This document shows, piece by piece, positions 1,980 to 64,000 of a stretch of DNA of 64,000 bases. Both the position numbers and the translations under genes were made by a program. Position 1 is the first letter of the stretch; every line of letters starts with the position of its first letter. This stretch comes from Octopus bimaculoides (taxonomy: Eukaryota): NCBI RefSeq assembly GCF_001194135.2, contig NC_068998.1, forward strand, positions 25,601,696 to 25,665,695, in the 5' to 3' direction. The notes beneath the pieces were generated by a model. The model worked only from the letters and a program-made list of their open reading frames with translations, did no database searches and was not told the DNA's origin.

Positions 1980-3200
1980 TTGGGTCATCCCGGATATAAC
2001 GCGTTTTTTTTACCAATTGCATCAACTAAAAGTCATAGGTGGGGGCGGCATAAACTACCTGCATNNNNNNNNNNTTCAGATCAGGTAATAATTAATTGTA
2101 CCTTGTCCTTATTCTTAGTGTAAGATTTGATTGCGGCAGTTCGATTTTAACACTTATTTTCTCAAAGCTATAATGGAAGTGATAAAGGAGCATATTCGGC
2201 ATATTTTGTTTTATGAGTTCAATATAGGCAACAACGCAACGGAAAGTGTGAGGAATATTAATGCAGTATATGGGGATCGGGCAATAAGCGTAAGCCAGTG
2301 TGAATGGTGGTTTCAGAAATTCCGAGCCATAAGCTATTTGCTAGAAAACGAGCCTTGTCCTAAAAAATTTGTAGAGCTCGACGAGGGCGTCTGCAAACTT
2401 TGGCGGGGCAAAATCTCATCGTAACTGTTGTGGAACTATCAAAGAAGCTTGGATTTAATCATTCAGCCATTCATCGACACATGCGTACCATCGGAACAGT
2501 CAGCAAAGTGGGTCAATTGGTTCCTCACAAACTTTTTCAGCTTTATCACGCACAAAGAGCGAATGTGTACTTATCGTTGCTGTCATATCTCACGAATGAA
2601 CCTTTTTTGCACCGAATAGTGAGTTGTGACGAGAAACAGGTTCTATAAAAGTGTCATTCACCGAAAATAGTGGGTAGGGAAAAGAGAAACACTGACACTC
2701 CAGTCTAAGGACTGTCTTCACCCACCTAATGTGTTCATTTCTGTTTGGTGGGATATGAAAGGTTTAGTCCACTTCAAACGATAATAAATGAGATTTAATG
2801 CGAGCAGTTTGAGCAGTTTAAGTCAGCGCTAGAAGAAAAACGACTATCCTTGGTTTCAAGACGGAAGATGTTCTTCCATCAGGATAATGCTCGGCTACAT
2901 ACAGCGCGGATGACATTCAAAAGACTGGAACAGTTTCAATGGGATACGATGCCCCGCCCACCATATTTGCCAGACATTGTCCCATCTGCTTATCATTTAT
3001 TCCGCAGTATTCAAAATCATTTGAACGGAAAAATATGAATTCTGTAGACGAGGTCACAACAGTGCTCGAGGAGTAATTTTCGTCACGGACAAGTGAATTT
3101 TGGAAGAGGGGATTTGCTAGTCTACTAGATAGATAGAAAAACATTGTAGAAAATGACGGAGAGTATATTTTAGATTTTAAAAAAACTTTCCTAAATTTAG
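1980..3200 (+). mobile_element. Mariner (DD34D) transposon, decayed
   Basis: EHIRHILFYEF..NATESVRNINAVYG (HTH), GQLVPHKL (WVPHEL-like), IVSCDEK, HQDNARLH, PPYLPDIVPSAYHLF, C-terminal ENDGEYILD; frameshifts and stops; left TIR-like ttgggtcatcc. Confidence 0.95.
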
Positions 3201-3475
3201 CTGCCCGATCTTGCACAGTTGATAAAGCTGGAGAGTCATCATTTGATGTAGCGACTATTTGAGTATGAATGTCCAGTTGCGCTACACCGTTTTTCTATAG
3301 GTACATGATAACACCACGATGCCAAATGTTGTCCAAAGACAAGAGACGTCACTAGTAGTTACATTTGAAGTCGCTTTTGCTCAGGTAGAAGTCAGTTTAC
3401 CTGGAAAGAAGCAATGTCCTCATTAATCAATTCATACATTAATTAATTGTCTGTAGTTATAAATATACGATACAC

Positions 3476-3715
3476 TTCACTTTTGCCGAATCATAACAAG
3501 CCGAAGCCAGGAAGCTGAACGGACACAAGGCCGAACGAAGAAGATGTTTAAAAGACATACAAGGATTAAAATATATGATAATCATTTTATTCATTCAATA
3601 TGACCATTTGACAGACGAAAATGGTCATTAAATTATGTAGGTAGGAATGTTTATTTTTATTATTGTGTCCGTTCGGCTACTTGGCTTCGGTTACTTGTCC
3701 TTCGGCAAAAGTGAA
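3476..3715. mobile_element. MITE-like fold-back element with ~53-bp imperfect TIRs
   Basis: 3476-3528 (ttcacttttgccgaa...gctgaacggacacaa) is the inverted complement of 3663-3715; central palindrome tgaccattt/aaatggtca. Confidence 0.8.
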
Positions 3716-3809
3716 TTCAGCATCCTGTCCGCGTACGATGNNNNNNNNNNNNNNNNNNNNNNNNNNNNNNNNNNNNNNNNNNNNNNNNNNNNNNNNNNNN
3801 NNNNNNNNA

Positions 3810-3891
3810 TATAAATACATAGATAGGTAGATAGATAGACAGACAGACATACAGACAGACAGACAAACAAACAGACAGACAGACAGACAGC

Positions 3892-3943
<52 letters not shown>

Positions 3944-3951
3944 CAGATAGA
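3810..3951. repeat. (GATA)n/(GACA)n compound microsatellite
   Basis: Direct inspection. Confidence 0.97.
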
Positions 3952-4106
3952 TATCTGTATCATATTTCCATATATATTTTCTAAATTTAATGTGTTGACG
4001 TTCTGGTATGTTTCAGAATCCTACATCGTTTCTGAAATGTGTGCAATCCACAAATTCATCGCTTTTCTATCTATAAAAGAAATATTGTTATTTTTTTTTG
4101 TTATAC

Positions 4107-4161
<55 letters not shown>

Positions 4162-4330
4162 ACCATCATTATCATTATTATTATTATTAAGAAGAAGAAA
4201 AGAAGAAACAGAAGAAGAACAAGAACAACAACAGCAACAACAACAAAAGCAGCAGCAGCAGCAGCAAAGATTACAACAGCAGCACCAAGACCAACAACAA
4301 TTTCAACAGCAGCAGCAGCAACAACAACTA
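4107..4330. repeat. Compound trinucleotide microsatellite (TAT)n-(AGA)n-(ACA/GCA)n
   Basis: Direct inspection; explains the polyL/polyQ and polyI pseudo-ORFs. Confidence 0.95.
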
Positions 4331-9129: not shown

Positions 9130-10120
9130 GCCGAGCGGTGTTCGCCTGTGGGAAGAATGTATGGTAGTGTAGCCACTTCAGTAAAGTTGACTGATTCGAA
9201 TTTATTCTCTTTTACTTGCATATTTTGCTTTAATGTTTATCGGATAACAGCGAACAGATCCAATTGTAGATTCGTCCAGTCTCCTGTTTTTACGATGACC
9301 TTCAGAAGCTTAGAGTCTTTCGCAAAAATTCTAAAATTAGCTATGTTTGAAGACGTCAATGATGTCATTGGTGTAAATAATAAAAAGGAATGGACCCAAT
9401 ACTGTGCCTTGTGGGGCTCTACTGATGATTCTCGCCGAGCATGATCGACCCCTGTCTATCGCCATATGCTGAGTTTCTGTTCACCAGAAAACATTCAATA
9501 CCATTTAATAGCTTCCTTCGGACTCCACTCTTCGATAGATCTTTTAACAGGATGCGATGGCCAACTTTGTCGAAGGCCTTGTTCACGCAGATGGCACCTG
9601 CATTGGAGCCTTCTCCCAGAATCTTTAGGATACCATCAAAATGATGCATGATCTATGTTTGGTAGTCTCTGTCACTGCGGAAATCATCCTAGTTCGGAAT
9701 AAGTGAGGTGCTACCTTACAGGAGCTGAGTTACTCGAGATCTCACCACTCTCTCGAATAATAAGAAGTAGGTGATTCGGTCATTATTCACTACCAACGGT
9801 TTGTTGCCATTTTTGAAAAATGGGCCACTCGTTTGGAATTTTCAGGAATATAGCTAGCTTCCAGTGTTTTCTTTCAAAGAATAGCTAAAAGGAAAGCCAG
9901 TTGATGACGGCACACCTTCACGACTCTGACTAGGAACTTGCTGGGATTTGTAGCTGAGTTCTTTGTTGCAATTTCATTAATAGCTACTATGATATCCGAG
10001 GCGTTACATGATTCATCGGTGAGAGTGATATGATGTGGATTGTTCGTTCTGGCAACTGGTATATATTACGTTACTAAAAGAGTAGTTGTTATTTGCTCAA
10101 AAATTTCGTGCGTTGAATAG
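9130..10120 (-). mobile_element. CR1-type LINE reverse-transcriptase fragment
   Basis: NKAFDKVGHRILLKDLSKSGVRRKLLNGIECFLVNR (FAKAFDKVDH..LL.KL motif), followed by a PQG.VLGP-like region (gagccccacaaggcacagtattgggtcca). Confidence 0.9.
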
Positions 10121-10359
10121 TTTTTATTGCATTTACTTGTCTCTCTACATAATTAGTAGTAAATAATATTCAGATTTTGTATGTGGTGTGTTTGAGGAAC
10201 ATGCTTACACTTTATATAATTCAAATAGACGTATATTCAAAACTGCCACTCCCTATCTCTATTCTCATAAATTATCTCACCCAGATAACTATGACTGTAC
10301 GTATGTCAGTCTGTAGTGTACAGACACAGAAAGGTAGATATATAGATATAGACAAACAG

Positions 10360-10404
10360 ACGGACCGGCGGACGGACGGACAGACAGACAGACAGACAAA
10401 CAGT

Positions 10405-10462
<58 letters not shown>
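10360..10462. repeat. (GACA)n/(GATA)n microsatellite
   Basis: Direct inspection. Confidence 0.97.
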
Positions 10463-10464
<2 letters not shown>

Positions 10465-10994
10465 GGTGACTGAAATACTATTAATACAAATATCTTTGAT
10501 TTGTCTACCGTTTTAGACGGAAGTTTTGTTAGACCACAGAATATTGCGTTGTTTGCCATTATAGTACTTCTCGTGTGGACTCATGAATCATTAAAACACG
10601 AGTATTTATAACGCTGACGAGTGATAAGCCCCCTCTATGGCTGCCGGAACTGTCAGATCCTATGATGTCGTCCTTCGTTGGTGTCGTTAGTGACTGACGT
10701 CCATCGGAGATATAACATCCGATTCCCCTGTCAAAGATATATAGAGTATTAGATTCTATTCAGGAACACGTATTGCAAATAGCCGGTGGACTTGTTAAGG
10801 TGTGTTAATACCAATATGAAATATTTATCTCTAACTTTACGTGGAAATTATGTTACAAAACAGAATACTGCATCATTTACCATCAATGATATAAACACGA
10901 TTGTTTTTAATGCACAACGAGTCCATATGAGAGATACTCTCAAGGTATATAACGGACTATTCTATATTCTAACACACATCCAAGGAAAGTGGTA

Positions 10995-11067
<73 letters not shown>
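10995..11067. repeat. (TA)n microsatellite
   Basis: Direct inspection. Confidence 0.97.
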
Positions 11068-32639: not shown

Positions 32640-33700
32640 TATATTTAATGAAACACATTTTGTTGTACCACTTTGATAGAGATCTGTTTAGTACAAGGAG
32701 TGTTTCATTTCTGAGGACGTACTCCTGTATTTGTCTGATTGTTGCGTCCTGCTGGTATATGGATAAAATGTTGATGTCCAGTCGACCCAGTGGGCCTCCA
32801 TGTTGGTCTTTGTCATGTTGTAGAGTGTGGAGGATTGATTTTTGTCGTCATATTGTTTCAAATGTCCATTTAATCTCCACGTAATGCTTCTACACGTCTC
32901 ACCAATGTATGTCATGCTCTTGTCTTTAAAAGCACCCTCTGTGCACCTTATGCTGTACACTACATTTCTAGTTCTACAGTTAATGCCAGGGTTGATCTTA
33001 CATGCCATGTAGTTCTGACTGGTGCATGCAGTATTCGTAAATGGGTACGCCGTACCTAACTGTGAGATATGATGGAGTTTTTCAACGTTTTTAATGTTGA
33101 GTTTGGTCTCTTTCAAAGCTTTCTTAAATCTTCGAGTTAGTTCTCCATAGGCTGTGCCCTCTACAAACATCACTCCTTAATATCTGCCGGCCTTGTTTGC
33201 CTTGTCACAAACTCCCTCTATCTTATTCCAGTCTTTACTTCTATATCCATGACAGGTACCACTGGTTTCATAACACATAGTGCTATCTAACTTATTTCTA
33301 GCTCTCCTGTATACACGAATCCAATCTTTCTGGTAATATCTAGAGAATTTCATGCTGTGCAAGAAGTTCTGTAAATAATACCTTGCTTTATAGGGTTCGG
33401 ATAAGGGGAACACATTATTCATTATCTTAACTAAGTCTGCCATCAGTATGTTGTTTGTCATGTTGTGTAACAAAGCTGGGTTCTTGTGCACAACATATTT
33501 AGAAGCTATAGGTATCATATAATAGGCGTGGAGGAGCTGCACTGTTAGTCTGTGACCAAAGTTCAGTTATAAGGACAGGGAATATATTGTTAGGATGCCC
33601 AGTGGGGTAATCTATAGTTACCATGATTCTTTGGTGGGTGGAGTTAGCAACGAGCTGGATGCTCTTCATTCAACAGCATTTCGTTCTCAGCCGAGGCCCA
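32640..33700 (-). mobile_element. Penelope-like element (RT-thumb region + GIY-YIG), 5' truncated
   Basis: ILMADLVKIMNN..NFLHSMKFSRYY; MFVEGTAYGELTRRF; NCRTRNVVYSIRC..TYIGETCRSITWRLNGH..QSSTLY. Confidence 0.9.
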
Positions 33701-33807: not shown

Positions 33808-33900
33808 TAAGGCAGCGAGCTGGCTGAAACGTTGGCGCACTGGGAGAAATGCTTAGCGGCATTTCGTCTTTACTTTTCATCCTTTACCCTTCATCGATTT
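33808..33900 (+). mobile_element. SINE family 1, 5' fragment
   Basis: ggcagcgagctggctgaaacgttggcgcactgggagaaatgcttagcggcatttcgtc matches the head at 50761. Confidence 0.8.
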
Positions 33901-34339: not shown

Positions 34340-35955
34340 ATTTCATTAGAAATATATGAAGAGAAGACTGCTCTTTCCTGCCTTTCAAAATGTTACGAAA
34401 ATGTACCAGAGCAATGACATTAAATAAGGCAGCAGCACGAACTGTAGATACTTTTTCAGGATGATTTTGTTCAACAGATTCAGAAACATACTGCCACCCT
34501 TGACAACCCTACCTTCCCCTCCGGGGAACCAATCTCTTCTACCGCATCCGAATACTGCTGCTCCTGAAGCTGCATGAATCCAACTGTCGTCACCTACTCT
34601 GAGTGTTCTTCGGCGCAATCGTTAATATGCCCATCGTCAAGCTCGAGGCCTATGGGCTTGCCAAGAGACACTATCCCCTCGACTACAGGTGTCTCAGACT
34701 TAAACCCCTCGAAGTTTCTTCCTGATACATAGTCAGACCACATTTTCGAACATGCAGAATTGAGCGTTCTCCTCGTTACACCTTGTAAGGCCATATTGAT
34801 GCTTTTCAGGCAGTTAGCAATATCGTAGAGCTCCTTCTAAAACACACGAAGAGTTAGATTTGTATTTTCGGTGACTTCAAAGCGTCGAGGAAACAGATGT
34901 TTGGTGTACCATTCGGTGAAGAATTGCCTGGTGACCGAGGCCTTAACGTTTGCTCTCCATATAACTTGTAGCCGCTCCTTCAGGATTTTGTGCGACTTAG
35001 ATGCTCGTGGGTTTTCGGAATACTAGACAAGGAGCAGCTTAACTTCTAAGTCTGTACTCGCTTTGGAACAAAGGGTGAGTTAGTTTATCTTTCATAGACT
35101 TGTGGCTTGGTATTTTCCTCTCCTTTAAAGTTGCGTGGGTTTTTCTGGGTATTTTCTTTTTTCAAAACAGGCCAGTTTCATCACAGTTGAATACTTGTGA
35201 AATGTACCGCTCTGCTGTGGTGAGCTCACGGCATTCAAACATGAGTTCCTCAAGTGCCATCGTGTCAGTATTCGTTGTTTTTCTATACTTCACGGCGATT
35301 TGGACACCAGTCCTCTTCTTGAAATTGTCGAACCGGCTGCCTCTGGCCTTAAATACGTCTGCTGATGTCTCCTCCGTCGATGTTTCAGGGTTCTGCTTCA
35401 GGGGATTTCCATGCAGTGCTCCTACGTCCTTGCAGTTGATGGTTTCGTAGCCGTATGCCCCACGAGTTGACTCTCTGTGATCCACAAGAGAAGTAATTTT
35501 TCCATCACTTCGTGGACAGATGTGTATTACTTGGAGAGCCTGGAGACACCCGTTGCTATTGTAACGTCCTTGATTTCGTCCTTTTTTTTCAGGATCGTGC
35601 AGATCGTCGAAGTCTTTCAGTCGTATTAACATGCTATGTCCACTATACGCACTTCTCTCTCTCATGTTTCTCAATGATTTCGTTCATCAATTCTGTCCAA
35701 ATCAGCTTTTTCTTCTTTTCAGCACTGTCCTTTGCACTACCTTTCTTGGGACCCATGGCTAACACAAATATTTATTATAAAATGATAGCAAAAAACGCGC
35801 AAAACTAAAAAGAAATACTAGGAAAAACACAATAAGAATGCTGTCACAACGAAATAAACACGTGAAATGAGCGAGCGGAGGCTGTGTTTGTTGGGAGAGT
35901 GTATGCGATCTCAGCGCTGAGTAGCAATCGCTTGTATGAAACTTCCACATACTGA
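34340..35955 (-). mobile_element. pogo/Tigger DNA transposon, decayed
   Basis: MGPKKGSAKDSAEKKK; FKARGSRFDNFKKRTG; QVFNCDETGLF; downstream SENPRA-like and ELQEQQYSD motifs. Confidence 0.93.
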
Positions 35956-36059
35956 TAGTTTCCACTCGTACTCTAACGAAAAAATTACCGCTCTACAACA
36001 AATTACTTGTACAATGTTGCAAACATGCTGCGAGGATATACTATGTATTGAGACAGTGA

Positions 36060-36093
36060 GAGAGATGACAGACAGACAGACAGACAGACAGAC

Positions 36094-36149
<56 letters not shown>

Positions 36150-36165
36150 GGATGGACGGATAGAA
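36060..36165. repeat. (GACA)n/(GATA)n microsatellite
   Basis: Direct inspection. Confidence 0.97.
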
Positions 36166-37149
36166 AAATAGATAAATGGGTACCACCTTACAATTTCAGA
36201 ATATAAGTTACATTTGCTATAGGTTTTGTTTGTACATTCGCATATACACTAAATATATGCACATACACTGAACCGGAAAAGAAACGCGAGATTTGTGTGA
36301 CTGTGAAATATGTTTTAATTTCATTATGTCAGAGATAAATTTTGATAAATCTGATGAAGTCAAGTCCTTGCATGCAGTTTGACTACAGTCTATGGATTCT
36401 TGTCGTGTGTTCTGGTAGTGGGTGGATCCAGCACATCCTGATTGTAAGGCGTGACATGTTCAATACTGTGTAATGCCCTCCCTATGTTCAAAACGGCTAT
36501 ACACCGTCGGAACATGGAATGCATGAGGTGGTTCACAAACGCCATTTGCATCTGTGCCCACACCCTGAGGAAAGCAGTCTCCAGTTCCACATGAGTTGTC
36601 GGCTTTGAGGCCACCTAGTTTAGCCGTCTCTGGATTTCATCCCTCAGGTGTTCAATTGGGTTCAAATCCGGACTGAGAGCCGGCCACGGTATCGTTCTAA
36701 TGTTGTGCTGACGCAGAAAGTCCATGGTGACCCTGGCCGTGTGGAAAGGAGCATTGTCCTGCTGGAGCATTGTTCTACTGGCTCTGGTTACACGTGAAGA
36801 AGGGCACGATGTGCGGTTTTAGGATCGGGCCAACGTAACGCAGTTCAGTGATGCCATTCTCTCTGCCTGGACCAATATTTTGGAACACATGGAACCCAAT
36901 TCTCTGTTTCAGGTCTATAGGACCCACAAACCATAATGTTTGGGCCACCCCACGCGTCTCTCTGCGAGCACGATCTGCAGTGCGTGCTGTTGGTGTAATT
37001 GTATCGCTGTTGCAGGCGATAGATGGTGCTGACATGGACATTGTAAGCTTTCGCAATATCCAGACCACGCTACTCCGCTTGCAATCAGCCGATAGCTTGT
37101 TCTCTAGGCGCTGCTGACAATCGGGTCATACATGATGCCTCCAAATTAC

Positions 37150-38926
37150 GAATGAATTCTTTATTGTCCACAGGGGATTAAATATAGAGGGGACAGTACA
37201 AATACAAACAGAACAGTACAAAAAAAAAAAAGAAACACAAATGTGGGGAAAAAAACGAATGAAAAACAATAAGAGAAAATTAATGAAGGGGTGGAATGAC
37301 CACCACTCGAAACACCCCACTCCGAATGACAAGATTAAACTCTTTTACAACCAATTACATAAATAAAGTTTTTATATCATTTCTTTTTAAATATCTAGAA
37401 GACTCACCGATATCGGCTTCAATGTTCGTAAGGTACACACTTTCCTCGAACTTCTCCTGCAGTCTGCGAAATTACCCTCCGCCAACAAAAACACATCTAA
37501 TATTTGAGGGATACTTCATACAAGCAGGAATATCAACTTTCACAATGTCTTTTAAACTGTTTATTTCCTTCGTCAGCTCATTAAACAGTTCATTGAAAGC
37601 TATAACACAGCTCTTTTCACAGGGTGTGGGCTGGGGGATTTGGGGCTCCTGCAATTCTGCTTTTGTGTCTGTAGGGTCAGGGTCGATGTCAGTGATTGGT
37701 GGAGTAGGTCGAGGACTGGTGCCTGCAGGGGTAGGGTTGGTGGCACGGGGTAGGGAAGGGCGGGTGTATGGTTGGGGTCATCATCACTTGTGTGGTTTCG
37801 CTTCTTCTTCTTTCTGTTTCTTTTGGTGATTTATTACATCCATTTGCTGTTTCTTCTTCCACTTATTTGTCATTTCTTTTCCGTTGCAAATGGCTCTTCT
37901 TCGCATATTCCTTCATTCAACGCTGCAATAGTTGGAAGTGCAGTTTCCCTCACTACCGTTATGACCACCGGTGCCTTTGCGGGAGGGGGAGGGCAATCCG
38001 CTCTTATGTAGCCCTTCTGGCCACACTTGTAGTAGCGCGGATTTCTGTCCTCTACTACAACTCTCAATCTTTTATCATCCATCACAATGGGATCGATGAT
38101 GTTTTCCAAATATTTCGGGGCAGCCTGGATGATCATTTCCAGTCCCTGCGCCAGCCAGTTCCGCGTTCGTGTTTTCATAGATTGGAGGATCAATATTTTC
38201 TCCTCTAAGCCCATCATTAACACTGCCACCAGCCAGGCAACATCCGCCTCAGGTGGTATCTCCTCTACCCTTACTCTGGAAGCACGTATTCCAAGGTAAG
38301 TTGGTAGTAATATACTTTCCTCTGCTTTCAGGGAGGACACAGAGTGTTGCCTGGCCAATTCTTCTGTTGGGAATCGTACTTCCACTGGAGCGTATTCGGC
38401 CAGGTTACAATATTTCCGGCCAGACGGGTGCCAAGCACTTTTCAGTTTGTACCTTGGTTGCCATTTCAATTTTCTTCTCCTTTATCACATATGTCTTAGA
38501 TATCATCGTTTTCTTGCAAATGTCCCTCGTAATTTCGTTAGGAGGGGTCAATTCTACCTCGAACCCCTCTCCTTGATATTTTACCAAGTCCTACCTTTCA
38601 AACTCCATATTTTTCTTCGACACGCCCGCTGCTGTCCCATGACTTTCGATACTTTTTCCGGTTTCTTTTTCTTTTCCTCCTCTTACCAGCTCTCCCTCCT
38701 TGCCACTCGCGTAATACATCAATTCACTGTCCGACAACGCCACGCTGGACGAACTTACATCGTGTTTCCTCATAACACCTCTCCTTCAAACAAGGTGGGA
38801 ACGACAACTAGACCACCGCAAAGCAGTGAAACATGAGTGTCTGACAAGCACAAGCAATAACAAAGTAACAACTGTAATAAAACAAGTGATACGGACTGTA
38901 ATTCACGATACTAACTCTAGGTGTCA
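37150..38926 (-). mobile_element. ORF1-only non-LTR retroelement, copy 1 (gag-like, CCHC knuckle, no RT)
   Basis: Broken ORF 38773 to ~37355 incl. VEVRFPTEELARQHS..RVRVEEIPPE..RNPRYYKCGQKGYIRADC; ~200-nt 3' UTR ending in an aataaagaattcattc tail; candidate TSD aaattac at 37143-37149 and 38927-38933. Confidence 0.75.
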
Positions 38927-38933
38927 AAATTAC

Positions 38934-40620
38934 AAATGAATTTATTCTGGCCATGAAGGCCTTACATAGAGGGGACAGCACAAATACAAACATAAAAGTG
39001 GGGGGGAAAAAGTTTTAAAACCAGTGCAAAAGATGTAAAATAATTAAATGAGAGGATGAAATGACTGCCGCTCGAAACCCAACGCTCCGAGCAACCTCAT
39101 TGAATATTATTACAAACAATTACATTAATTAAATTTATCTTTCTTCTTTTTCTGTTAGACTTTAATCGTGCAAACTTACAAATTTTTAATCGACTGCACG
39201 GTCGATTTCTATCGTCCGCCCATCACTGATCGATTCATACTTCCTTTTTAGTTCTTTAAGATGCTCTTTACTAATAACTATGCCACTCGCGTTATCAAAG
39301 TAGTTATCAGCTTTGCACAGATTCACGCCCTTGTCAATTTTCTCCATCTCCTCCGCCAACTTTTTAGTCGACCTACAGAATATTGCAATGTAGCACTTTA
39401 CATGGGGTGAAGGCTGGGGTTTTTCGATTCATGTCTGCTTGTTTTTTTTTTGTAGGAGTAGGGTCAGGGTCAGTGTTTCGTGGTGCAAGGCAGGGGCTGG
39501 TGCATGGAGGAGAAGGGTGGGGAGGAAAGGGTGGGGAGGGATGAGGTGGGATCGGGTCGGGGATCTTGTTCACTGGTAGGTTGTCTCTTCCTTCGTTTCC
39601 TTATTTTAGGTTCGGCCGTCCATTCTTTCATTGCTTGCTCTTGTTCACATGGATACTCCATTTGTATTTCCATCGCCTTTGGTGCCATAGTGGGTGGAAG
39701 TACGGTTTCCACTGGTTGAGCAACTGGAATCTCTACAAGGTGGGACGGCACTCAGCTCTTATATGGCCCATCTGGTCGCACTTAAAACACCGGGGTTTCT
39801 GCCCTCCACCATAACCCTCAGCTTTTTCCCCCACTACAATGGTGTTCATTATCGTGTCCAAGTGTCTGGGGCAGCCTGGATGACCATTTTCAGGCTTTGG
39901 TCTATTCAGTTCCGTGCTGGTACTCTCGCGGCCTGATGGATTGTTACTTTCTCCTCCAGGCCCAATACTATGGCCGCAATCAGCCAGGCAGCATCCACCT
40001 CCGGTGGTATCTCCTCCATCCTCACCCTGGAAGACCGTCTTCCGACGAAGACGGTAGGAGGATTGTATTCTCTGTTGCTAACGAGGTCATGGAGTGTTGC
40101 CTGGCCTTCTTTTCAGCGGGAAGCCTCACTTCCACTGTTGCGAATTTGCTCCCCCCGCCCAGGTATGTTATACCTGACCAGAAGGGAGCCTAAAACTTCT
40201 CGATTTCCCTTCTATCAGCCACGTTGATGGATTTTTCTTTTCTATTAAAACTTTTGAATGTTACCGTTTTCCTGGTTACACTCTGAGCCACTTCACCGGG
40301 AGGGGACTATCTTATTTTCTGTCCTTCCCTATACAACCTGCTTTTGTATTTATTTAATTCGTTCGTTACCACTGCCAAATGTTTCCTTTCTAAACCGGCC
40401 GCAGCCGAAAAATTCTTCTTTTCACTCGCCGTATTTCTATCCCTCAGTTCCTCCCCCATGCTTTTCACACATTGTAGGAGCTCGTTCTCCAACGAATCTA
40501 TGTGGGAAGAGCCAATCTCCTCGAAGTTGATCTTCATGATAAATATCAAACTTTCCCTCCTTCAAACAAGGTGGATACAACGTCGACAAATCCGCTCGCA
40601 CGGGAGAAACAAGGTGTTTT
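38934..40620 (-). mobile_element. ORF1-only non-LTR retroelement, copy 2 (divergent paralogue)
   Basis: VEVRLPAEKKARQHS..RVRMEEIPPEVDAAWL..RCFKCDQMGHIRAEC (CX2CX4HX4C at 39748-39789); same 5' motif and 3' tail as copy 1. Confidence 0.75.
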
Positions 40621-43600
40621 AAGCCACAACAACTAATTTAAGAAACGCAGCAGCTTGAGACAAAAGCAATTAAGCTTACAAACCTTGAAACTTTGAAACA
40701 CCACGTCCGAACTCAAAAAGTGTGAAATTTTGAATGCCAGGAACGCGGTTCAAGTTGATATTTATACTCATAATCTCAATGAGATGCACGTGCATTTTGG
40801 TTTTCATGACAATGTTTTGGCGACTGCCACTCGCAGCATTCAATGCAGCTGCGTTTTGGCGTCTCGTTTCTGAGAAAGTTGAAAGGTTAACTTCAATTTG
40901 GACCTCAGCCATAAACCAGCATGTCTTGGAATATTTACACTTACATCCCCGAAATAAGTTTTCAGAATTTACCATATAAAAATGACATCTGAAGAAATCG
41001 CGTTTCTTTAGCGGTTCAGTTTACGCTTGTACTCACACAAACACACATACAGAAGTTTCTCTATCTCTTACACACTCTTATGTTTATCTATATTTTACTG
41101 TTTATTTGTGTCTCCTTTTGACCATGTCCTTCTTTACAGCTAAATACACTTCTGCCCCAAATCATATACACGCACAAGCCTTGCTGCCACATATTTTGTA
41201 GTTTAATAATGTAATATTTGTGCAACTCGCAGCTGGGTAAAACTTCTAAGACTTGACAAGAATAATATATTTGTGGATACAATATTTAAAACGAAATATC
41301 AGAAATGTATATCGGAGTCTTTAAATGATTAAAGTTACAAGGAAATGAAAGACTTTTAATTCCCTTGCTTTTTGGCTTTCGGCTACTATCGTGATTACAA
41401 CTCCACTTGTTGTATTTGTTTGCTCTAGTCATCAATCTTGAAGAATTGAATTCATCTAGACAGAGCAGATATTATTTTCAACATTTGCTATACGACTTAG
41501 CCATTACGTGAACTGAGAAGAGGATTTTTCTATATATGTCATTTAGATAAATATCAATTTATCTCCCTGATATTTTCCCTCCAATTTTCACACATTATAC
41601 AATCTCAAATTACTTGTTACTTTATATATAACTTTCATCACACACTTTTTTAATCTTTGCTACTATTCTAAATTATTAACTCAACTTTCATTTTCATTAG
41701 AACAATGACAGAAATATTTTCGATGAAAGTAAAAACAAAGTCGGAAAGCTAAATAGTTTTCAGAATTAATTTGTATTTACGTGATTCTGTACATTAAGGG
41801 ATATTACGGGTTTGCATTAAAGCACTTCTCTTTATGTTTCTTATAAATTATAGATACGACTTTTCATATATTCTACATCTGAATATAATCATTAAACATC
41901 ACGATGGAAATGATAAAGGTTAAATATACTTAATCTTCTCAATAAATGTCTATACATACTACACACTCTTAAACACGTGAATATAATCCACACATACATA
42001 TACAAACATTCTAAAGGCGTCTAGTCATTATGTCGTACGACAGAAATATATGACTTATGTAGTCATTCAATTGCAGCTGCTTATGAGTTGTTCTGATAAA
42101 TTAAACAACTAAACTTAATACAGTTCTAATGTTTATAATGTTACTTTTCATATCCTATTTGTCATGAATATTTCCACCTGCCCCAGTGAGCAATAACGCT
42201 TTATGTTTGCCTCATAGACATTATTCTGGTGCTTACATTTTTAATGTTTTAGATTTTTATACTTTATATATAAAATATATTCAACATAAGATTCAAAGAC
42301 ACTTATGCACACAAGTACCTGTATTTATGTATTTGTATGTATATATTCGTATATGTGTATATTTCTATGTATTATTATGCGCATATATATATATATGTAT
42401 ATATACACACACACACATATACACATATATATATATATACATACATGCATACATATTTATAAATGTATATGTGGGGGGAGGGTCGGGTTTAGTAGTGCGT
42501 GTGTGGGTGTATAGATCTACGTACAATGTAGCTACTATATACTCATAGGCTTCAATGTATGCATGTGATACACACATAAGTATATGTGATACACAAATAA
42601 GTATATAAGAATAAATAAGTATTTACTATGTCAGTATTTTAGCACGAACAGCTAAGTTAGGAGAATGCAAACACACCACCACCGGTGGCCAAGCAGTGGA
42701 GGGGAACACAGACACACGAACACACACACATACAAATATATACACACAACACACAGGCTCAAGCATACACACACACAGACATACACACACAGATATATAC
42801 ACATACCTGTTTATCTGCTATATATTGCACTTTCAGGTACCTGCGTGAATTATCCTAGATCTAATGATGGACAGATCTGAGTTTTATCGGAAGTATTTAT
42901 CTCTAATATTAGCTGAAATAATCGAGGAAATTAATGTAGAAAAATTGAATACATATACTGGGGAAATATTAACTAAAAACATTCGATTTACGAAAAGTCA
43001 GAATTTTAAACAAATGAATGTTGTTCTGACGCAATTGAAGTAAGCTGTTGCATATTAGCTTCGAGGATGAATGGAAACTAAATATGTACAAATTGAAGAG
43101 AACTGCAACTTTGAAACGAAACACTTAAAGGAATAAGAAACATTGAGACATTTAATAGGGTGTTGAAAGTTTCTAAGTGGATTCATGAACATAAAAAGTT
43201 GAAAAAGACAGATACAATGACGTGAGAGATGTTTCCCTGGCTCCACTGACACCCAAGGAAACAGAGATAAAACACGAATGTTAGATTTGTCAGGAAAGGA
43301 GACACGAGCTCTAATGGCCCTGCAACCACAAATGTGAACACCAAGGAGATGAACAAGCTAAAATAGGAAACGAAAAGAAAGAAGAAAAGAAAGCAAAGCC
43401 TCTGAAAACAAACAGGAAAATGACGATGCGGACACAAAAAAGTAGAAACGCAAAATAGAAGAACCAAGGAAAGATTGACCATGCGCGAAAGTACGAATAG
43501 TTAAAAGAAAGTAAACGCTGTAACAAGAAAGACCCCACACAATAGAAATGGGATGAGAGATCACATACAAGCGTATAAATTCTACCTACGCGGTGTCTGC

Positions 43601-44339: not shown

Positions 44340-44535
44340 TACACAAGGCCCGAAATTGGGGGGGGGGGTAGTTGATTAGGTTGTCCTCAGTACTCGACTG
44401 GTACGTTTTGCATCGACTACGAGATGATGAAAGAAAAAGTCTACATCGGCGAAAAATGAACTGAGAGCGTAGCGACGGATGACGTACCGCTAAGAATTTT
44501 CCTGGCTTGCTAACGATTCTGCCAGCTTGCCGCCT
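44340..44535 (-). mobile_element. SINE family 1 with tail type B
   Basis: rc of the ggcggcaagctggcagaatcgttagc head, core, and aggcccgaaattgggg tail. Confidence 0.85.
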
Positions 44536-44538
44536 TAA

Positions 44539-50760: not shown

Positions 50761-50993
50761 GGCGGCGAGCTGGCAGAAACGTTAGCACGCCGGGCGAAAT
50801 GCTTAGCAGTATTTCGTCTGCGTTTACGTACTGAGTTCAAATTCCGCCGAGGTCGACTTAGCCTTTCATCCATTCTCACTCGATTAAATAAGTACCAGTT
50901 ACGCACTGGTGTCGATGTAATTGATTTAATCCCTTTGTTTGTCCTTGTTTGTCCCCTCTATGTTTAGCCCCTTGTGGGTAATAAAGAAATAAG
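50761..50993 (+). mobile_element. SINE family 1, full-length, tail type A
   Basis: tRNA-like head ggcggcgagctggcagaaacgttagc..gagttcaaattcc, core gcctttcatcc..aagtaccag, tail gtcccctctatgtttagccccttgtgggtaataaagaaat. Confidence 0.9.
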
Positions 50994-51190
50994 AAACATT
51001 AGCACGCCGGGCGAAATGCTCAGCGGTATTTCATCTATCTTTACATTTCGAGTTCAAATTCTGTCGAGGTCGACTTTGCCTTTCATCCTTTCGGGGTTGA
51101 TAAATTAAGTACAAGTTGCGTACTGGTGTCCATCTAATCGACTGGTGCTCTTCCCCAAAATTTCAGGCCTTGTGCCTAGAGTAGAAGAGA
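50994..51190 (+). mobile_element. SINE family 1, head-clipped tandem copy, tail type B
   Basis: Same head/core; tail ccccaaaatttcaggccttgtgcctagagtagaa. Confidence 0.9.
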
Positions 51191-62827: not shown

Positions 62828-63030
62828 AGGTACAAGGCCTGAAATTTCGGGGGAGGGGACCAGTCGAAGACATAGAACCCATTGTTTCACTGGTACTTAA
62901 TTTATCGAACTCGAAAAAGATGAAAATCAAAGTTCACCCCGGCAGCATTTGAAATCAGAGCGTAAAGACGGGCGAAATACCGCTCAAGCATTTAGCCCGG
63001 CATGCTAAAGGTTCTGCCAGCGTACCGCCT
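62828..63030 (-). mobile_element. SINE family 1, tail type B
   Basis: tacaaggcctgaaatttcggggg..ggtacttaatttatcga..gaaataccgctcaagcatttagcccggcatgctaaaggttctgccagcgtaccgcc. Confidence 0.88.
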
Positions 63031-64000
63031 TCCAGACAAATTAAATCAGTTACACATGTCAAATAAACTTTATTTTCATTTACATATGTTCTACGTTATC
63101 TCGATAACCAGCTATAGTTATTTCAAATACCCTTCTCTACAACGACCAGGTTTCATTACAAAATGAAAAGAGTTTCACAATTTCAATTTGTACCAAAATT
63201 ACAAAGTGTTGCATTACTGCAGTGACGATGTGGGAATAATGACAGTAAAGTTTCTCCGAATTACTCACATGTGTATTATAATAAAGTTGCATATTATCTA
63301 TCTACCAAATAAGCTTTGTTTTTGACTTAATAACTCTTTTTTACAACAAAAATAACCTCGGCAGCTACGTTGGGTCGCACAATTTTGAAGTCATTTTCGG
63401 ACAATATTTTGATTTGTTTCTAATGTATCACTTTAGTCCGATGTTTCTTCTTTTTAGCATGTCCGATGTGACATTTCCGTCCTCTATTTATTTTTTTCCT
63501 AAATATCTTCCGATTCCTATCTTCGCCACACAGGAGATTAGGATTTCTCACACAAAACATGTTCTCAATATTTTATTTTTCTCCCTCTCCGCACCAAATT
63601 AATTTTTTTACTTTTTTCAAATTTTTATTCTTGGTAATCCATGGAGGAAAAAAAACAGAGAGTGCGAATCTTTAAGAATTTTACCCGTTACTTCACCACT
63701 TTCAAAAATCTACATACTCCCAATGTTCACCTTTAACATTTTGGAACGCAGTGAAGTTTCTTCAGAAATAATGTCGTTTACTTGTTGTTTCTAGCATGTT
63801 GGGTTTTCTGGTGGTGGTCTGGTATTTTTAAGTCTTCTATTTCAGTAGTATTCTACGCATGTGGGAAACATCAGACAAAAGTGAAAGATGGGGAAATTTT
63901 AGCTTTTGACAGCTGGTAGGTGATGGCTGGGCGAGGTCGAGGAAGGGGCATTGAATGGTTCTTTAAGAAAAATTAAACTATAACACACACACACACAAGA

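What the first reader, a model, noticed from the sequence alone, without database searches (positions are those of the whole stretch)
37150..40620. Two divergent ORF1-only (gag/CCHC) retroelements: a candidate undescribed half-LINE family
Seen: two ~1.7 kb units with identical architecture (short 5' UTR, one gag/ORF1-like ORF with an RRM-like VEVR.P.E..AR segment and CX2CX4HX4C knuckle, Pro-rich linker, ~200-nt 3' UTR, conserved tail, short ATTC-like end). The proteins are clearly homologous but well diverged (e.g. RVRVEEIPPEADVAWLVAVLMMGLEEK vs RVRMEEIPPEVDAAWLIAAIVLGLEEK). Neither has any RT or endonuclease sequence. Known: ORF1-only non-autonomous LINE derivatives exist in mammals (HAL1). 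Inference: an old, diversified cephalopod analogue that makes its own RNA chaperone and borrows RT via the shared tail.
Basis: partly seen in the sequence, partly recalled or inferred. Interest (0 to 1): 0.82.

Follow-up and report, generated by a model that had tools for sequence, protein, structure and literature searches.

The report
Octopus half-LINEs that keep only ORF1
Two decayed copies of a 1.7-kb octopus jumping gene that keeps a LINE's RNA-binding gene but has lost its copying enzyme, and probably borrows that enzyme from full-length relatives through a shared 3' tail; it resembles mammalian HAL1 and fly HeT-A.

Summary
The two units are real, lie on the minus strand, and are retroelements without ORF2. 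Unit A (37157-38923) has a 17-bp target-site duplication, and a related contig (L012) shows the site empty. Unit B (38941-40724) is older. Both are nested in a Tc1-like DNA transposon, and both are dead: A has 2 frameshifts and 5 stops, B has 4 frameshifts and at least 8 stops. The CCHC knuckle is intact only in B.

The ORF has 323 relatives, and every named one is octopod. In Argonauta hians, Octopus sinensis and O. vulgaris, homologous ORF1s are followed by an L1-type ORF2 (endonuclease, RT, zf-RVT) and end in the same tail as A, B and a SINE.

Three more ORF2-less copies were found. Two are TSD-flanked, and one has an intact 460-aa ORF.

ORF1 evolved under purifying selection:
- A vs B: pN/pS 0.53.
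- Two ORF2-less sister elements, core: 0.35.
- Neutral control: 0.89.

The kind is already known (HAL1 in mammals, HeT-A in flies), so this is a new member of a known kind. I could not check Repbase or Dfam.

The parts
37157..38923 (-). Unit A: a complete ORF2-less element of 1767 nt. 5' UTR 38774-38923, broken ORF1 38773-37355, 3' UTR 37157-37354.
   Evidence: Boundaries are set by the TSD and by the empty site in L012. There is no EN/RT match.
38924..38940 (-). Upstream copy of unit A's target-site duplication (TTCATTTGTAATTTTGA).
   Evidence: It matches the downstream copy at 15 of 17 positions. The repeat finder family D7 picks up its core. L012 has this sequence only once.
37140..37156 (-). 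Downstream copy of unit A's target-site duplication (TTCATTCGTAATTTGGA).
38941..40724 (-). Unit B: an older ORF2-less element of about 1784 nt. ATG at 40535-40537, ORF end at 39186-39188, 3' UTR 38941-39185. The 5' end is tentative.
   Evidence: Aligned with A. It is 72-75% identical to L012 across the whole unit and its flank. Divergence from L012 is neutral. The 5' start CACACTTTTTGAGTTCGGACG resembles A's 5' start, and a candidate TSD lies at 40725-40736.
39748..39789 (-). Intact CCHC zinc knuckle of unit B (CFKCDQMGHIRAEC).
   Evidence: Pfam zf-CCHC, E=3e-4, 21.2 bits against a cutoff of 20.8. Coordinates derive.
37981..38037 (-). Degenerate knuckle region of unit A (RYYKCGQKGYIRADCPPPP). 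The first Cys and the His are replaced by Tyr.
   Evidence: (no Pfam hit).
37873..38469 (-). Longest open stretch of unit A (199 aa). It covers the end of RRM-like module 1, all of module 2 and the knuckle.
   Evidence: The AlphaFold model has a confident beta-alpha-beta-beta-alpha-beta core.
37159..37195 (-). Terminal tail box of unit A (TGTCCCCTCTATATTTAATCCCCTGTGGACAATAAAG), containing the hairpin at 37166-37178.
   Evidence: Shared with the SINE and with full-length LINEs.
38941..38977 (-). Terminal tail box of unit B (TGTCCCCTCTATGTAAGGCCTTCATGGCCAGAATAAA), containing the hairpin GGCC/GGCC at 38949-38961.
38781..38798 (-). Conserved 5' UTR box CCACCTTGTTTGAAGGAG just upstream of unit A's ATG. 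The identical box in unit B is at 40557-40574.
   Evidence: (family D10).
36264..41023 (-). Host Tc1/mariner-like DNA transposon remnant in which B and then A are nested. TIRs at 36264-36289 and 40998-41023; transposase ATG at 37127-37129.
   Evidence: Inverted repeat I2, 26 nt, 88% complementary. Pfam DDE_3 E=3.6e-10 plus an HTH. Translation.
50761..50990 (+). SINE-like repeat whose last 55-60 nt are the same tail as units A and B.
   Evidence: 81% identity over 54 nt. Alignment. nhmmer E=2.6e-10. A tRNA-like head was not detected by ARAGORN or Rfam.

Best explanation
Units A and B are two fossil insertions from diverged subfamilies of an ORF1-only, non-autonomous derivative of an octopod two-ORF LINE.

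The parent LINE encodes two proteins. ORF1p has two RRM-like domains, a CCHC knuckle, a disordered linker and a small C-terminal domain. ORF2p is L1-type, with an APE endonuclease, a reverse transcriptase and a zf-RVT domain. The parent ends in a specific 3' UTR whose last 40 nt or so hold a small hairpin followed by AAUAAAGAA.

The half-elements have lost ORF2 cleanly. They keep the 5' UTR, the whole of ORF1 and the whole 3' UTR.

Proposed mechanism:
1. The 1.7-kb RNA is translated into ORF1p, which coats its own RNA in cis.
2. ORF2p supplied by a full-length relative recognises the shared 3' tail.
3. ORF2p inserts the RNA by target-primed reverse transcription, leaving 16-19-bp target-site duplications.
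4. The same tail lets a SINE use the same enzyme. The result is three tiers sharing one tail: LINE, half-LINE and SINE.

In this window, B inserted into a Tc1-like DNA transposon first. A inserted later, directly behind B's tail, which gives the tandem appearance.

Shown: the anatomy, the TSDs, the empty site, the partner LINE, the shared tail, and selection on ORF1.
Inferred: cis action of ORF1p, trans use of ORF2p, and recognition of the tail.
For: **Retroelement insertions that lack ORF2**
- A has a 17-bp TSD, and L012 shows the empty site.
- L010 unit 0 (2495-4185) has a 16-bp perfect TSD and an intact 460-aa ORF.
- The L011 element (9458-11055) has a 19-bp TSD inside a SINE.
- L022 has only about 780 nt between the knuckle and the tail.
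- There is no EN/RT match in the window, and none in L011 over 20.7 kb.

**Partner LINE**
- In L001 (Argonauta), ORF1 is followed 39 nt later by an ORF2 with Exo_endo_phos 1e-8, RVT_1 8e-30 and zf-RVT 7e-8.
- That ORF2 is collinear with human L1 ORF2p, E=4e-42.
- L002, L009, L010 and L017 also have ORF1 followed by ORF2.

**Shared tail**
- 17 tails from 4 genomes were recovered with one profile.
- The whole 3' UTR is collinear between half-elements and full-length elements.
- RNAalifold predicts a 4-bp hairpin. 89% of cells pair against 77.5% in shuffles (0/500) and 14-45% when the partner is slid. One pair switches CG (6) / GC (5) / UA (1).

**Selection on ORF1**
- A vs B core: pN/pS 0.53 (0.41-0.70), codon-position differences 0.35/0.26/0.47.
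- Unit 0 vs L011 element core: 0.35 (0.26-0.47) with pS 0.70.
- Neutral control, B vs L012: 0.89 (0.64-1.26), positions 0.21/0.22/0.20.

**Lineage**
- A+B group at 72% bootstrap and unit 0 + L011 element at 99%, apart from the full-length L009/L010 clade at 84%.
- A, B, L012 and L022 share one ORF1-to-3'UTR junction.

**Protein**
- 323 relatives were found, and the named ones are all octopod.
- The P0001 model has pLDDT 83.5 with two beta-alpha-beta-beta-alpha-beta modules. Foldseek's top hits are tandem-RRM proteins, E from 8e-5.
Against: - Both window copies are dead, so nothing here shows current activity in this genome.
- Trans-mobilisation, tail recognition and cis action of ORF1p are inferred by analogy, not tested.
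- Sampling is thin: five independent ORF2-less insertions, plus L012, which carries the same insertion as B, and about ten full-length units.
- The node joining the two ORF2-less pairs has under 60% bootstrap support. One protein in that part of the tree (P0006, contig L017) does have an ORF2. So I cannot separate a single origin of ORF2 loss from repeated origins, and full-length elements nested inside each pair cannot be excluded.
- The hairpin has only 4 bp, and the sequences are related, so shuffles overstate its significance.
- Copy number could not be estimated.
- Pfam finds no RRM at the sequence level.
Confidence: 0.78

Rival explanations
1. There is no self-sustaining half-LINE lineage. 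Each ORF2-less copy is a dead-on-arrival by-product of a different full-length LINE. It would arise from splicing of the LINE RNA (as with spliced L1 insertions), from RT template switching, or from internal deletion at a structurally favoured place. The selection signal would then reflect the evolution of the full-length masters.
For: - ORF1s of full-length and ORF2-less elements are interleaved at the resolution available. P0006 (L017) carries an ORF2 yet falls near the ORF2-less group, and the deep nodes have under 60% support.
- A is barely closer to B (50%) than to the ORF1 of a full-length element (45%).
- The two ORF2-less pairs have different junction details.
- HAL1 itself arose several times (PMC5753468).
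Against: - Within each pair, deeply diverged members share the same junction, the same 3' UTR start and the same 5' UTR features. A and B share CCACCTTGTTTGAAGGAG. A, B, L012 and L022 share TTCAAyGArGTyrCTyGGAG.
- Unit 0 and the L011 element are sisters at 99% bootstrap and share their ORF end.
- No sampled full-length element is closer to any half-element than its half-element sister is.
- Unit 0 keeps an intact ORF.
- No splice-junction signature was identified.
Confidence: 0.15
2. A and B are a local tandem duplication of a single internally deleted LINE copy, and the two halves then drifted apart.
For: The units are adjacent, head to tail, in the same orientation, and have the same architecture.
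Against: - A has its own 17-bp TSD.
- L012 carries B but has an empty site exactly where A sits.
- A-B divergence shows coding constraint (third position 0.47 against second position 0.26; pN/pS 0.53). True neutral decay, B vs L012, gives 0.89 with equal positions.
- Identity ranges from 43% to 76% along the unit, which neutral drift does not predict.
Confidence: 0.02
3. The units are decayed copies of a host gene, meaning a domesticated gag-like or CCHC RNA-binding protein, and not transposable elements.
For: Database homologs are annotated only as uncharacterized or CCHC-type domain proteins in Octopus gene sets.
Against: - TSDs flank the copies, and they are nested inside a DNA transposon and inside a SINE.
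- The 3' tail is shared with LINEs and SINEs.
- Homologs sit directly upstream of EN-RT ORFs.
- There are hundreds of diverged copies.
Confidence: 0.01

Closest known systems
HAL1 (half-L1) of mammals
   Same: Both are non-autonomous LINE derivatives that keep ORF1 and the LINE termini, have lost ORF2, and amplify as such. Diverged subfamilies exist, and ORF2 loss may have happened more than once. HAL1 encodes only ORF1p and arose independently several times (PMC5753468, citing Smit 1999 and Bao & Jurka 2010).
   Different: - HAL1 derives from mammalian L1, with a Type II ORF1p (coiled coil, one RRM, CTD; Pfam Transposase_22) and a poly(A) end.
- Here ORF1p is Type I-like (two RRM-like modules plus CCHC), with no Transposase_22 hit.
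- The 3' end here is a specific conserved tail with a hairpin, and a SINE shares it.
- The host is an octopod.
HeT-A and other ORF1-only telomeric Jockey-clade elements of Drosophilids
   Same: These are non-LTR elements that encode only ORF1/Gag and depend on an RT supplied in trans. ORF2 loss is frequent in that group: about 40% of telomeric families are ORF1-only (PMC13534243). They also occur in head-to-tail arrays with RT-encoding relatives. That arrangement is seen here in the window and in L009 and L010.
   Different: - HeT-A-type elements are telomere-specialised and belong to the Jockey clade.
- The octopod arrays sampled are chromosome-internal: about 31.9 of 40.2 Mb and about 71.0 of 109.7 Mb.
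- The partner ORF2 here is collinear with L1 ORF2p.
- There is no evidence of any host function.
LINE/SINE pairs with a common 3' tail (stringent-type recognition; Ohshima & Okada 2005, as cited in PMC4824008)
   Same: A short conserved 3' tail with a small stem-loop is shared between an autonomous LINE and non-autonomous passengers. The SINE at 50761-50990 carries it.
   Different: One of the passengers here is not a pol III SINE. It is a 1.7-kb protein-coding element that keeps the LINE's own ORF1 and its complete 3' UTR.
Type I ORF1p LINEs of the L1/Tx1 group
   Same: ORF1p has RRM and CCHC domains (definition in PMC5203782). ORF2p has APE, RT and a C-terminal zinc-binding domain.
   Different: - Clade membership was not tested by an RT phylogeny.
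- The elements end in a specific tail, not in poly(A).
- ORF1p carries an extra conserved C-terminal domain (Y..LK..FP.DVG) with no Pfam match.

Membership tests
Non-LTR retroelement inserted by target-primed reverse transcription | Target-site duplication flanking a complete copy | tested here: met
   A: 17 bp, 15/17 identical. L010 unit 0: 16 bp, perfect. L011 element: 19 bp, 18/19. B: only a tentative 12-nt candidate.
Non-LTR retroelement inserted by target-primed reverse transcription | Unoccupied (empty) site in a related sequence | tested here: met
   L012 and L013 run from B's tail straight into the sequence that follows A in the window. Whether L012 is an orthologue or a paralogue is unknown, because its flanks lie inside the Tc1-like element.
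ORF1-only non-autonomous LINE derivative (HAL1-like kind) | ORF homologous to the ORF1 of an autonomous LINE | tested here: met
   tblastn hits of 27-40% identity to ORF1s that directly precede EN-RT ORFs in L001, L002, L009, L010 and L017. phmmer E-values reach 3.7e-34.
ORF1-only non-autonomous LINE derivative (HAL1-like kind) | No ORF2 (EN/RT) between ORF1 and the 3' end | tested here: met
   Only 198 nt (A) and 245 nt (B) separate the ORF1 stop from the element's end. No tblastn hit to ORF2 in the window.
ORF1-only non-autonomous LINE derivative (HAL1-like kind) | Several independent copies share the same ORF2-less structure | tested here: met
   A, B (which is the same insertion as L012) and L022 share one junction. 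Unit 0 and the L011 element share another. That makes five independent insertions. No genome-wide count was possible.
ORF1-only non-autonomous LINE derivative (HAL1-like kind) | ORF1 maintained by purifying selection within the ORF2-less lineage | tested here: met
   Unit 0 vs L011 element core: pN/pS 0.35 (0.26-0.47). A vs B: 0.53 (0.41-0.70). Neutral control: 0.89. This rests on each pair's common ancestor already lacking ORF2.
ORF1-only non-autonomous LINE derivative (HAL1-like kind) | Mobilised in trans by the ORF2p of the autonomous partner | not testable with these tools
   Inferred from the shared 3' UTR and tail. It needs a retrotransposition assay.
HAL1 in the strict sense (mammalian L1 derivative) | L1 Type II ORF1p (Transposase_22) and a poly(A) 3' end | tested here: not met
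   Pfam finds only zf-CCHC. The elements end in a specific tail...CCCTTGTGGnnAATAAAGAA. So it works like HAL1 but is not a member of HAL1.
Type I LINE ORF1p (RRM + CCHC) | CCHC zinc knuckle | tested here: met
   Pfam zf-CCHC in B (E=3e-4) and in homolog P0005 (E=4.7e-5). It is degenerate in A.
Type I LINE ORF1p (RRM + CCHC) | At least one RRM domain | tested here: met
   Met at the fold level for the intact homolog P0001: two beta-alpha-beta-beta-alpha-beta modules, and 23 PDB hits with E<=1e-3 led by tandem-RRM proteins. The window's own 199-aa ORF gave no significant hit. There is no Pfam RRM hit at the sequence level.
L1/Tx1-group LINE (the autonomous partner) | APE endonuclease, RT and a C-terminal zinc-binding domain in one ORF2 | tested here: met
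   Exo_endo_phos, RVT_1 and zf-RVT in L001. Collinear with human L1 ORF2p, E=4e-42, against about 1e-19 for R2, which matches over the RT only.
L1/Tx1-group LINE (the autonomous partner) | RT phylogeny places it inside the L1/Tx1 clade | not tested
   No reference set of LINE RTs (Repbase) was available. The PDB holds only L1 and R2 for comparison.
HeT-A-type telomeric ORF1-only elements | Telomere-specific location | tested here: not met
   The arrays sampled lie at about 31.9 of 40.2 Mb (L009) and about 71.0 of 109.7 Mb (L010). The window units sit inside a DNA transposon.
SINE | Short, non-coding, with a pol III-type head | tested here: not met
   A and B are about 1.77 kb and carry an ORF of about 470 codons. 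Only the last 55-60 nt are shared with the SINE.

The most novel reading that the evidence does not exclude
This octopod LINE family, both full-length and ORF1-only members, may build head-to-tail arrays at chromosome-internal sites. It could do so by integrating preferentially at the ends of resident copies, or by RT template jumping. That would be a HeT-A/TART-like array-forming habit outside telomeres and outside insects.

The ORF1-only lineages may also have persisted as independent parasites of the full-length elements since early in the octopod radiation. The tail is conserved between Argonauta and Octopus, and synonymous sites are saturated within an ORF2-less pair.
Probability: 0.3. 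Interest if true: 0.6.

Novelty: new member of a known kind. Interest (0 to 1): 0.45.

Why it matters
ORF1-only LINE parasites are documented in mammals (HAL1) and in Drosophilid telomeric elements (HeT-A type). A third, independent case in cephalopods would show that keeping ORF1 while borrowing the RT is a recurrent and stable strategy.

It also bears on an open question: why a non-autonomous element gains from making its own ORF1p, that is, cis preference and RNP formation.

The octopod system has useful features for experiments:
- One conserved tail and hairpin is shared by a LINE, a half-LINE and a SINE.
- At least one half-element in O. sinensis has an intact ORF.
- Young full-length partners exist (99% identical copies in O. 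vulgaris).

Together these make the requirement for the tail and for ORF1p directly testable. The result also matters for annotation, because octopus gene sets currently list these ORF1s as uncharacterized host proteins.

Tried and rejected
- **The search for homologous proteins** returned 0, 1 and 0 hits in three searches: conceptual A, the family profile, and unit 0 residues 1-272. Low-complexity linker words probably saturate its word index. The exhaustive HMMER search found 323 relatives. Copy number therefore could not be estimated.
- **Pfam** recognises only the knuckle.
- **Rfam** finds nothing relevant in 36000-41500, and no tRNA-like head in the SINE. ARAGORN finds no tRNA.
- **Foldseek on the window's own 199-aa ORF** gave no significant hit. 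The intact homolog was needed.
- **A blastn of A/B against the loci** came back empty only because the query file was missing. It was redone.
- **An idea I dropped:** that A's last codons (TLFM*) are a remnant of the ORF2 C-terminus. The ORF1s of P0043 and P0005 end the same way.
- **B's own TSD** stays tentative, because no uninterrupted copy of the host Tc1-like element was found.
- **The species behind runs SRR11869384-94** could not be identified.
- **P0005** could not be placed on a contig. L018 is too short to show whether an ORF2 follows.
- **Tandem-duplication and host-gene explanations** were considered and rejected (see rivals).
Full report
**1. What is in the window**

The feature lies on the minus strand. 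Two homologous units sit head to tail.

| | Unit B (upstream) | Unit A (downstream) |
|---|---|---|
| Coordinates | 38941-40724 | 37157-38923 |
| Length | about 1784 nt | 1767 nt |
| 5' UTR | 187 nt | 150 nt |
| 3' UTR | 245 nt | 198 nt |

Each unit also has a reading frame of about 470 codons and a conserved terminal box.

Nucleotide identity between them is very uneven:
- 43-54% in the N-terminal third and after the linker.
- 63-76% in the core, in the 18 nt just before the ATG (CCACCTTGTTTGAAGGAG, identical in both), and in the distal 3' UTR and tail.

Neither reading frame is open:
- A needs two frameshifts and carries five in-frame stops.
- B needs four frameshifts and carries at least eight stops.
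- The CCHC knuckle is intact in B (CFKCDQMGHIRAEC, Pfam zf-CCHC E=3e-4). It is degenerate in A (YYKCGQKGYIRADC).
- The frame does not end at the Pro-rich linker. It runs into a further conserved domain found in homologs (Y..LK..FP.DVG).

A tblastn with a complete LINE ORF2 finds nothing anywhere in the window.

**2. Unit A is a discrete retrotransposition event**

- A is flanked by a 17-bp direct repeat: TTCATTTGTAATTTTGA at 38924-38940 and TTCATTCGTAATTTGGA at 37140-37156. Fifteen of 17 positions match, and the repeat finder picks up the core as family D7.
- Contigs L012 and L013 come from another cephalopod read set. They align with the window through about 270 nt upstream of B and through all of B (72-75% identity). 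They then jump from B's tail directly to window 37158-37077, the sequence that follows A.
- A base-level alignment shows one copy of the duplicated sequence at that point, so this is an empty site for A.

Both units are nested in a Tc1/mariner-like DNA transposon:
- 26-nt terminal inverted repeats at 36264-36289 and 40998-41023, 88% complementary.
- Transposase remnant with Pfam DDE_3 E=3.6e-10.
- Transposase start codon at 37127-37129, ten bases beyond A's duplication.

The order of events is: B inserted first, then A inserted directly behind B's tail.

**3. The protein family and the autonomous partner**

The word-indexed protein search found nothing. An exhaustive HMMER search found 323 relatives at E<=1e-3, the best at 3.7e-34. 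All those with names are octopod: Octopus sinensis, O. vulgaris, O. bimaculoides and Argonauta hians. They are annotated only as uncharacterized or CCHC-type proteins.

Genomic context settles what they are:
- **Argonauta (L001).** The homologous ORF1 is followed 39 nt later by an ORF2 with Exo_endo_phos (1e-8), RVT_1 (8e-30) and zf-RVT (7e-8). That ORF2 is collinear with human L1 ORF2p (residues 8-812 against 12-829, E=4e-42). R2 proteins match only over the RT, at about 1e-19.
- **O. sinensis L002 and contig L017.** Both have the same ORF1-then-ORF2 order.
- **O. vulgaris L009.** Three complete units, 99% identical, head to tail with a 5.28-kb period.
- **O. sinensis L010.** At least four full-length units, 75-88% identical, also head to tail.

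A model of the intact homolog P0001 has mean pLDDT 83.5. It shows two consecutive beta-alpha-beta-beta-alpha-beta modules ahead of the knuckle. Its best PDB matches are tandem-RRM proteins: IMP3 RRM12 at 8e-5, then Raver1, NONO/SFPQ, U2AF65 and hnRNP A1 UP1. There are 23 hits at E<=1e-3. This fits the published Type I ORF1p definition of RRM plus CCHC (PMC5203782). The window's own 199-aa open stretch gave a confident core but no significant match.

**4. The shared tail**

Every full-length element ends in ...TGTCCCCTCTnTGTTnGCCCCTTGTGGGTAATAAAGAA or a recognisable variant of it, including the Argonauta element. So do A, B and a SINE-like repeat at 50761-50990. One nhmmer profile recovers 17 such tails in four genomes.

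The half-elements carry the whole LINE 3' UTR. The SINEs carry only the last 55-70 nt.

RNAalifold predicts a 4-bp hairpin immediately before AAUAAAG. Pair counts give it moderate support:
- 89% of cells pair, against 77.5% in shuffles (0 of 500 reach the observed value).
- 14-45% pair when the 3' partner is slid.
- One pair switches among C-G (6), G-C (5) and U-A (1).

Because the sequences are related and the stem is short, I treat this as supportive, not conclusive.

**5. More ORF2-less elements**

| Element | Coordinates | Length | TSD | ORF status |
|---|---|---|---|---|
| L010 unit 0 | 2495-4185 | 1691 nt | 16 bp, perfect (GGATGTGATATAATGA) | intact, 460 aa |
| L011 element | 9458-11055 | 1598 nt | 19 bp, 18/19 | open for 378 codons |
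| L022 | contig, 5' end missing | - | not determinable | decayed |

- L010 unit 0 has a 3' UTR of about 140 nt and the family tail. It lies about 30 nt inside the 5' end of a full-length unit.
- The L011 element is inserted in a SINE. No EN/RT occurs anywhere in the 20.7-kb locus.
- L022 has about 780 nt between the knuckle and the tail. Its 3' UTR start matches those of A and B.

Five independent ORF2-less insertions are therefore documented, in two pairs or groups. Members within each group are deeply diverged but share one junction.

**6. Selection**

| Comparison | pN/pS (bootstrap interval) | Differences at codon positions 1/2/3 |
|---|---|---|
| A vs B, core (141 codons) | 0.53 (0.41-0.70); dN/dS about 0.36 | 0.35 / 0.26 / 0.47 |
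| B vs L012 counterpart (control) | 0.89 (0.64-1.26) | 0.21 / 0.22 / 0.20 |
| Unit 0 vs L011 element, overall | 0.48 | - |
| Unit 0 vs L011 element, core | 0.35 (0.26-0.47); pS = 0.70 | 0.30 / 0.22 / 0.53 |

The control pair shares flanks and should have decayed neutrally after insertion, and it does. Unit 0 and the L011 element are sisters at 99% bootstrap. The protein was therefore maintained while synonymous sites saturated. The most parsimonious reading is that this happened within a lineage that already lacked ORF2.

**7. What remains uncertain**

- In a neighbour-joining tree of ORF1 cores, the ORF2-less elements (A+B 72%, unit 0 + L011 element 99%) fall outside the full-length L009/L010 clade (84%). 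The deeper nodes are unsupported, and P0006, which is nearby, belongs to an element with ORF2.
- A is only slightly closer to B (50%) than to full-length ORF1s (45%).
- So I cannot separate one ancient ORF2 loss from repeated losses. I also cannot fully exclude that half-elements are regenerated repeatedly from unsampled full-length masters.
- Trans-mobilisation and tail recognition are inferred.
- Copy number is unknown.
- Repbase and Dfam could not be consulted.

**8. Comparison with known systems**

The element works like HAL1, a non-autonomous L1 derivative that encodes only ORF1p and arose several times (PMC5753468). It also works like HeT-A-type elements. About 40% of Drosophilid telomeric Jockey families are ORF1-only, and they form head-to-tail arrays (PMC13534243).

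It is not a member of either:
- Its ORF1p is Type I-like, not Transposase_22.
- Its 3' end is a specific tail, not poly(A).
- The arrays seen are chromosome-internal.

Published octopus LINE work deals with single-ORF RTE and Dong elements (PMC9115989). Octopus tRNA-derived SINEs have been known since Ohshima & Okada 1994 (cited in PMC4824008). I found no description of this half-LINE in the searchable literature.

**9. Verdict**

The finding is a new member of a known kind, and it is of moderate interest.

Noticed in passing
L009:4438-19184 and L010:4186-20850: Full-length LINEs of this family sit in exact head-to-tail arrays at chromosome-internal sites. L009 has three units 99% identical with a 5.28-kb period. 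L010 has at least four units 75-88% identical. In each, the tail abuts a conserved 5' terminus (CAACTGAATACTCG / CACTGATAAGGACG). The mechanism is unknown; self-targeting, template jumping and unequal crossing-over are all possible.
   Followed up: partly
window 38924-38954; L010:2464-2494 and 4186-4201: Half-elements tend to land next to relatives. Unit A inserted directly after unit B's tail. L010 unit 0 inserted about 30 nt inside the 5' end of a full-length unit. The numbers are small, so this may be chance or a preference for A/T-rich targets.
   Followed up: partly
window 36264-41023: The host of both units is a Tc1/mariner-like DNA transposon remnant with 26-nt TIRs and a decayed DDE_3 transposase. 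Without the two insertions it would be about 1.2 kb.
   Followed up: yes
window 50761-51141, 62870-63031, 44397-44537, 33808-33869: There are several copies of a SINE-like repeat. The copy at 50761-50990 ends in the LINE-family tail. The adjacent copy, starting at 50992, has the same head but a different 3' end. The tRNA-like head was not detected by ARAGORN or Rfam.
   Followed up: partly
window 32688-33173 (-): An ORF containing ...VVYSIRCTEG...YIGETCRSITWRLNGH... looks like a GIY-YIG endonuclease remnant of a Penelope-like element.
   Followed up: no
window 35162-35674 (-): An ORF ending ...VFNCDETGLF looks like the start of a pogo/Tigger-type DDE transposase remnant.
   Followed up: no
L010:4020-4050 and L011:10890-10925: Both O. 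sinensis half-elements have a consensus 5' splice-donor-like sequence (AAG|GTAAGT and CAG|GTAAGC) where ORF1 meets the 3' UTR. Its significance is unknown.
   Followed up: no
ORF1 C-termini: window 37355-37636 and 39186-39440; P0002, P0005, P0021, P0043: After the disordered linker, the family ORF1p has a conserved small C-terminal domain (Y..LK..FP.DVG) that has no Pfam match and no known function.
   Followed up: partly
whole window: The window is a gap-rich draft scaffold with 6.3% N and 36% GC. It has many (TA)n, (GATA)n and (CT)n microsatellites bordering the gaps.
   Followed up: no
tools: The word-indexed protein search returned 0-1 hits for this family in three attempts, while the exhaustive HMMER search found 323 relatives. 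Low-complexity linkers probably saturate the candidate list.
   Followed up: partly
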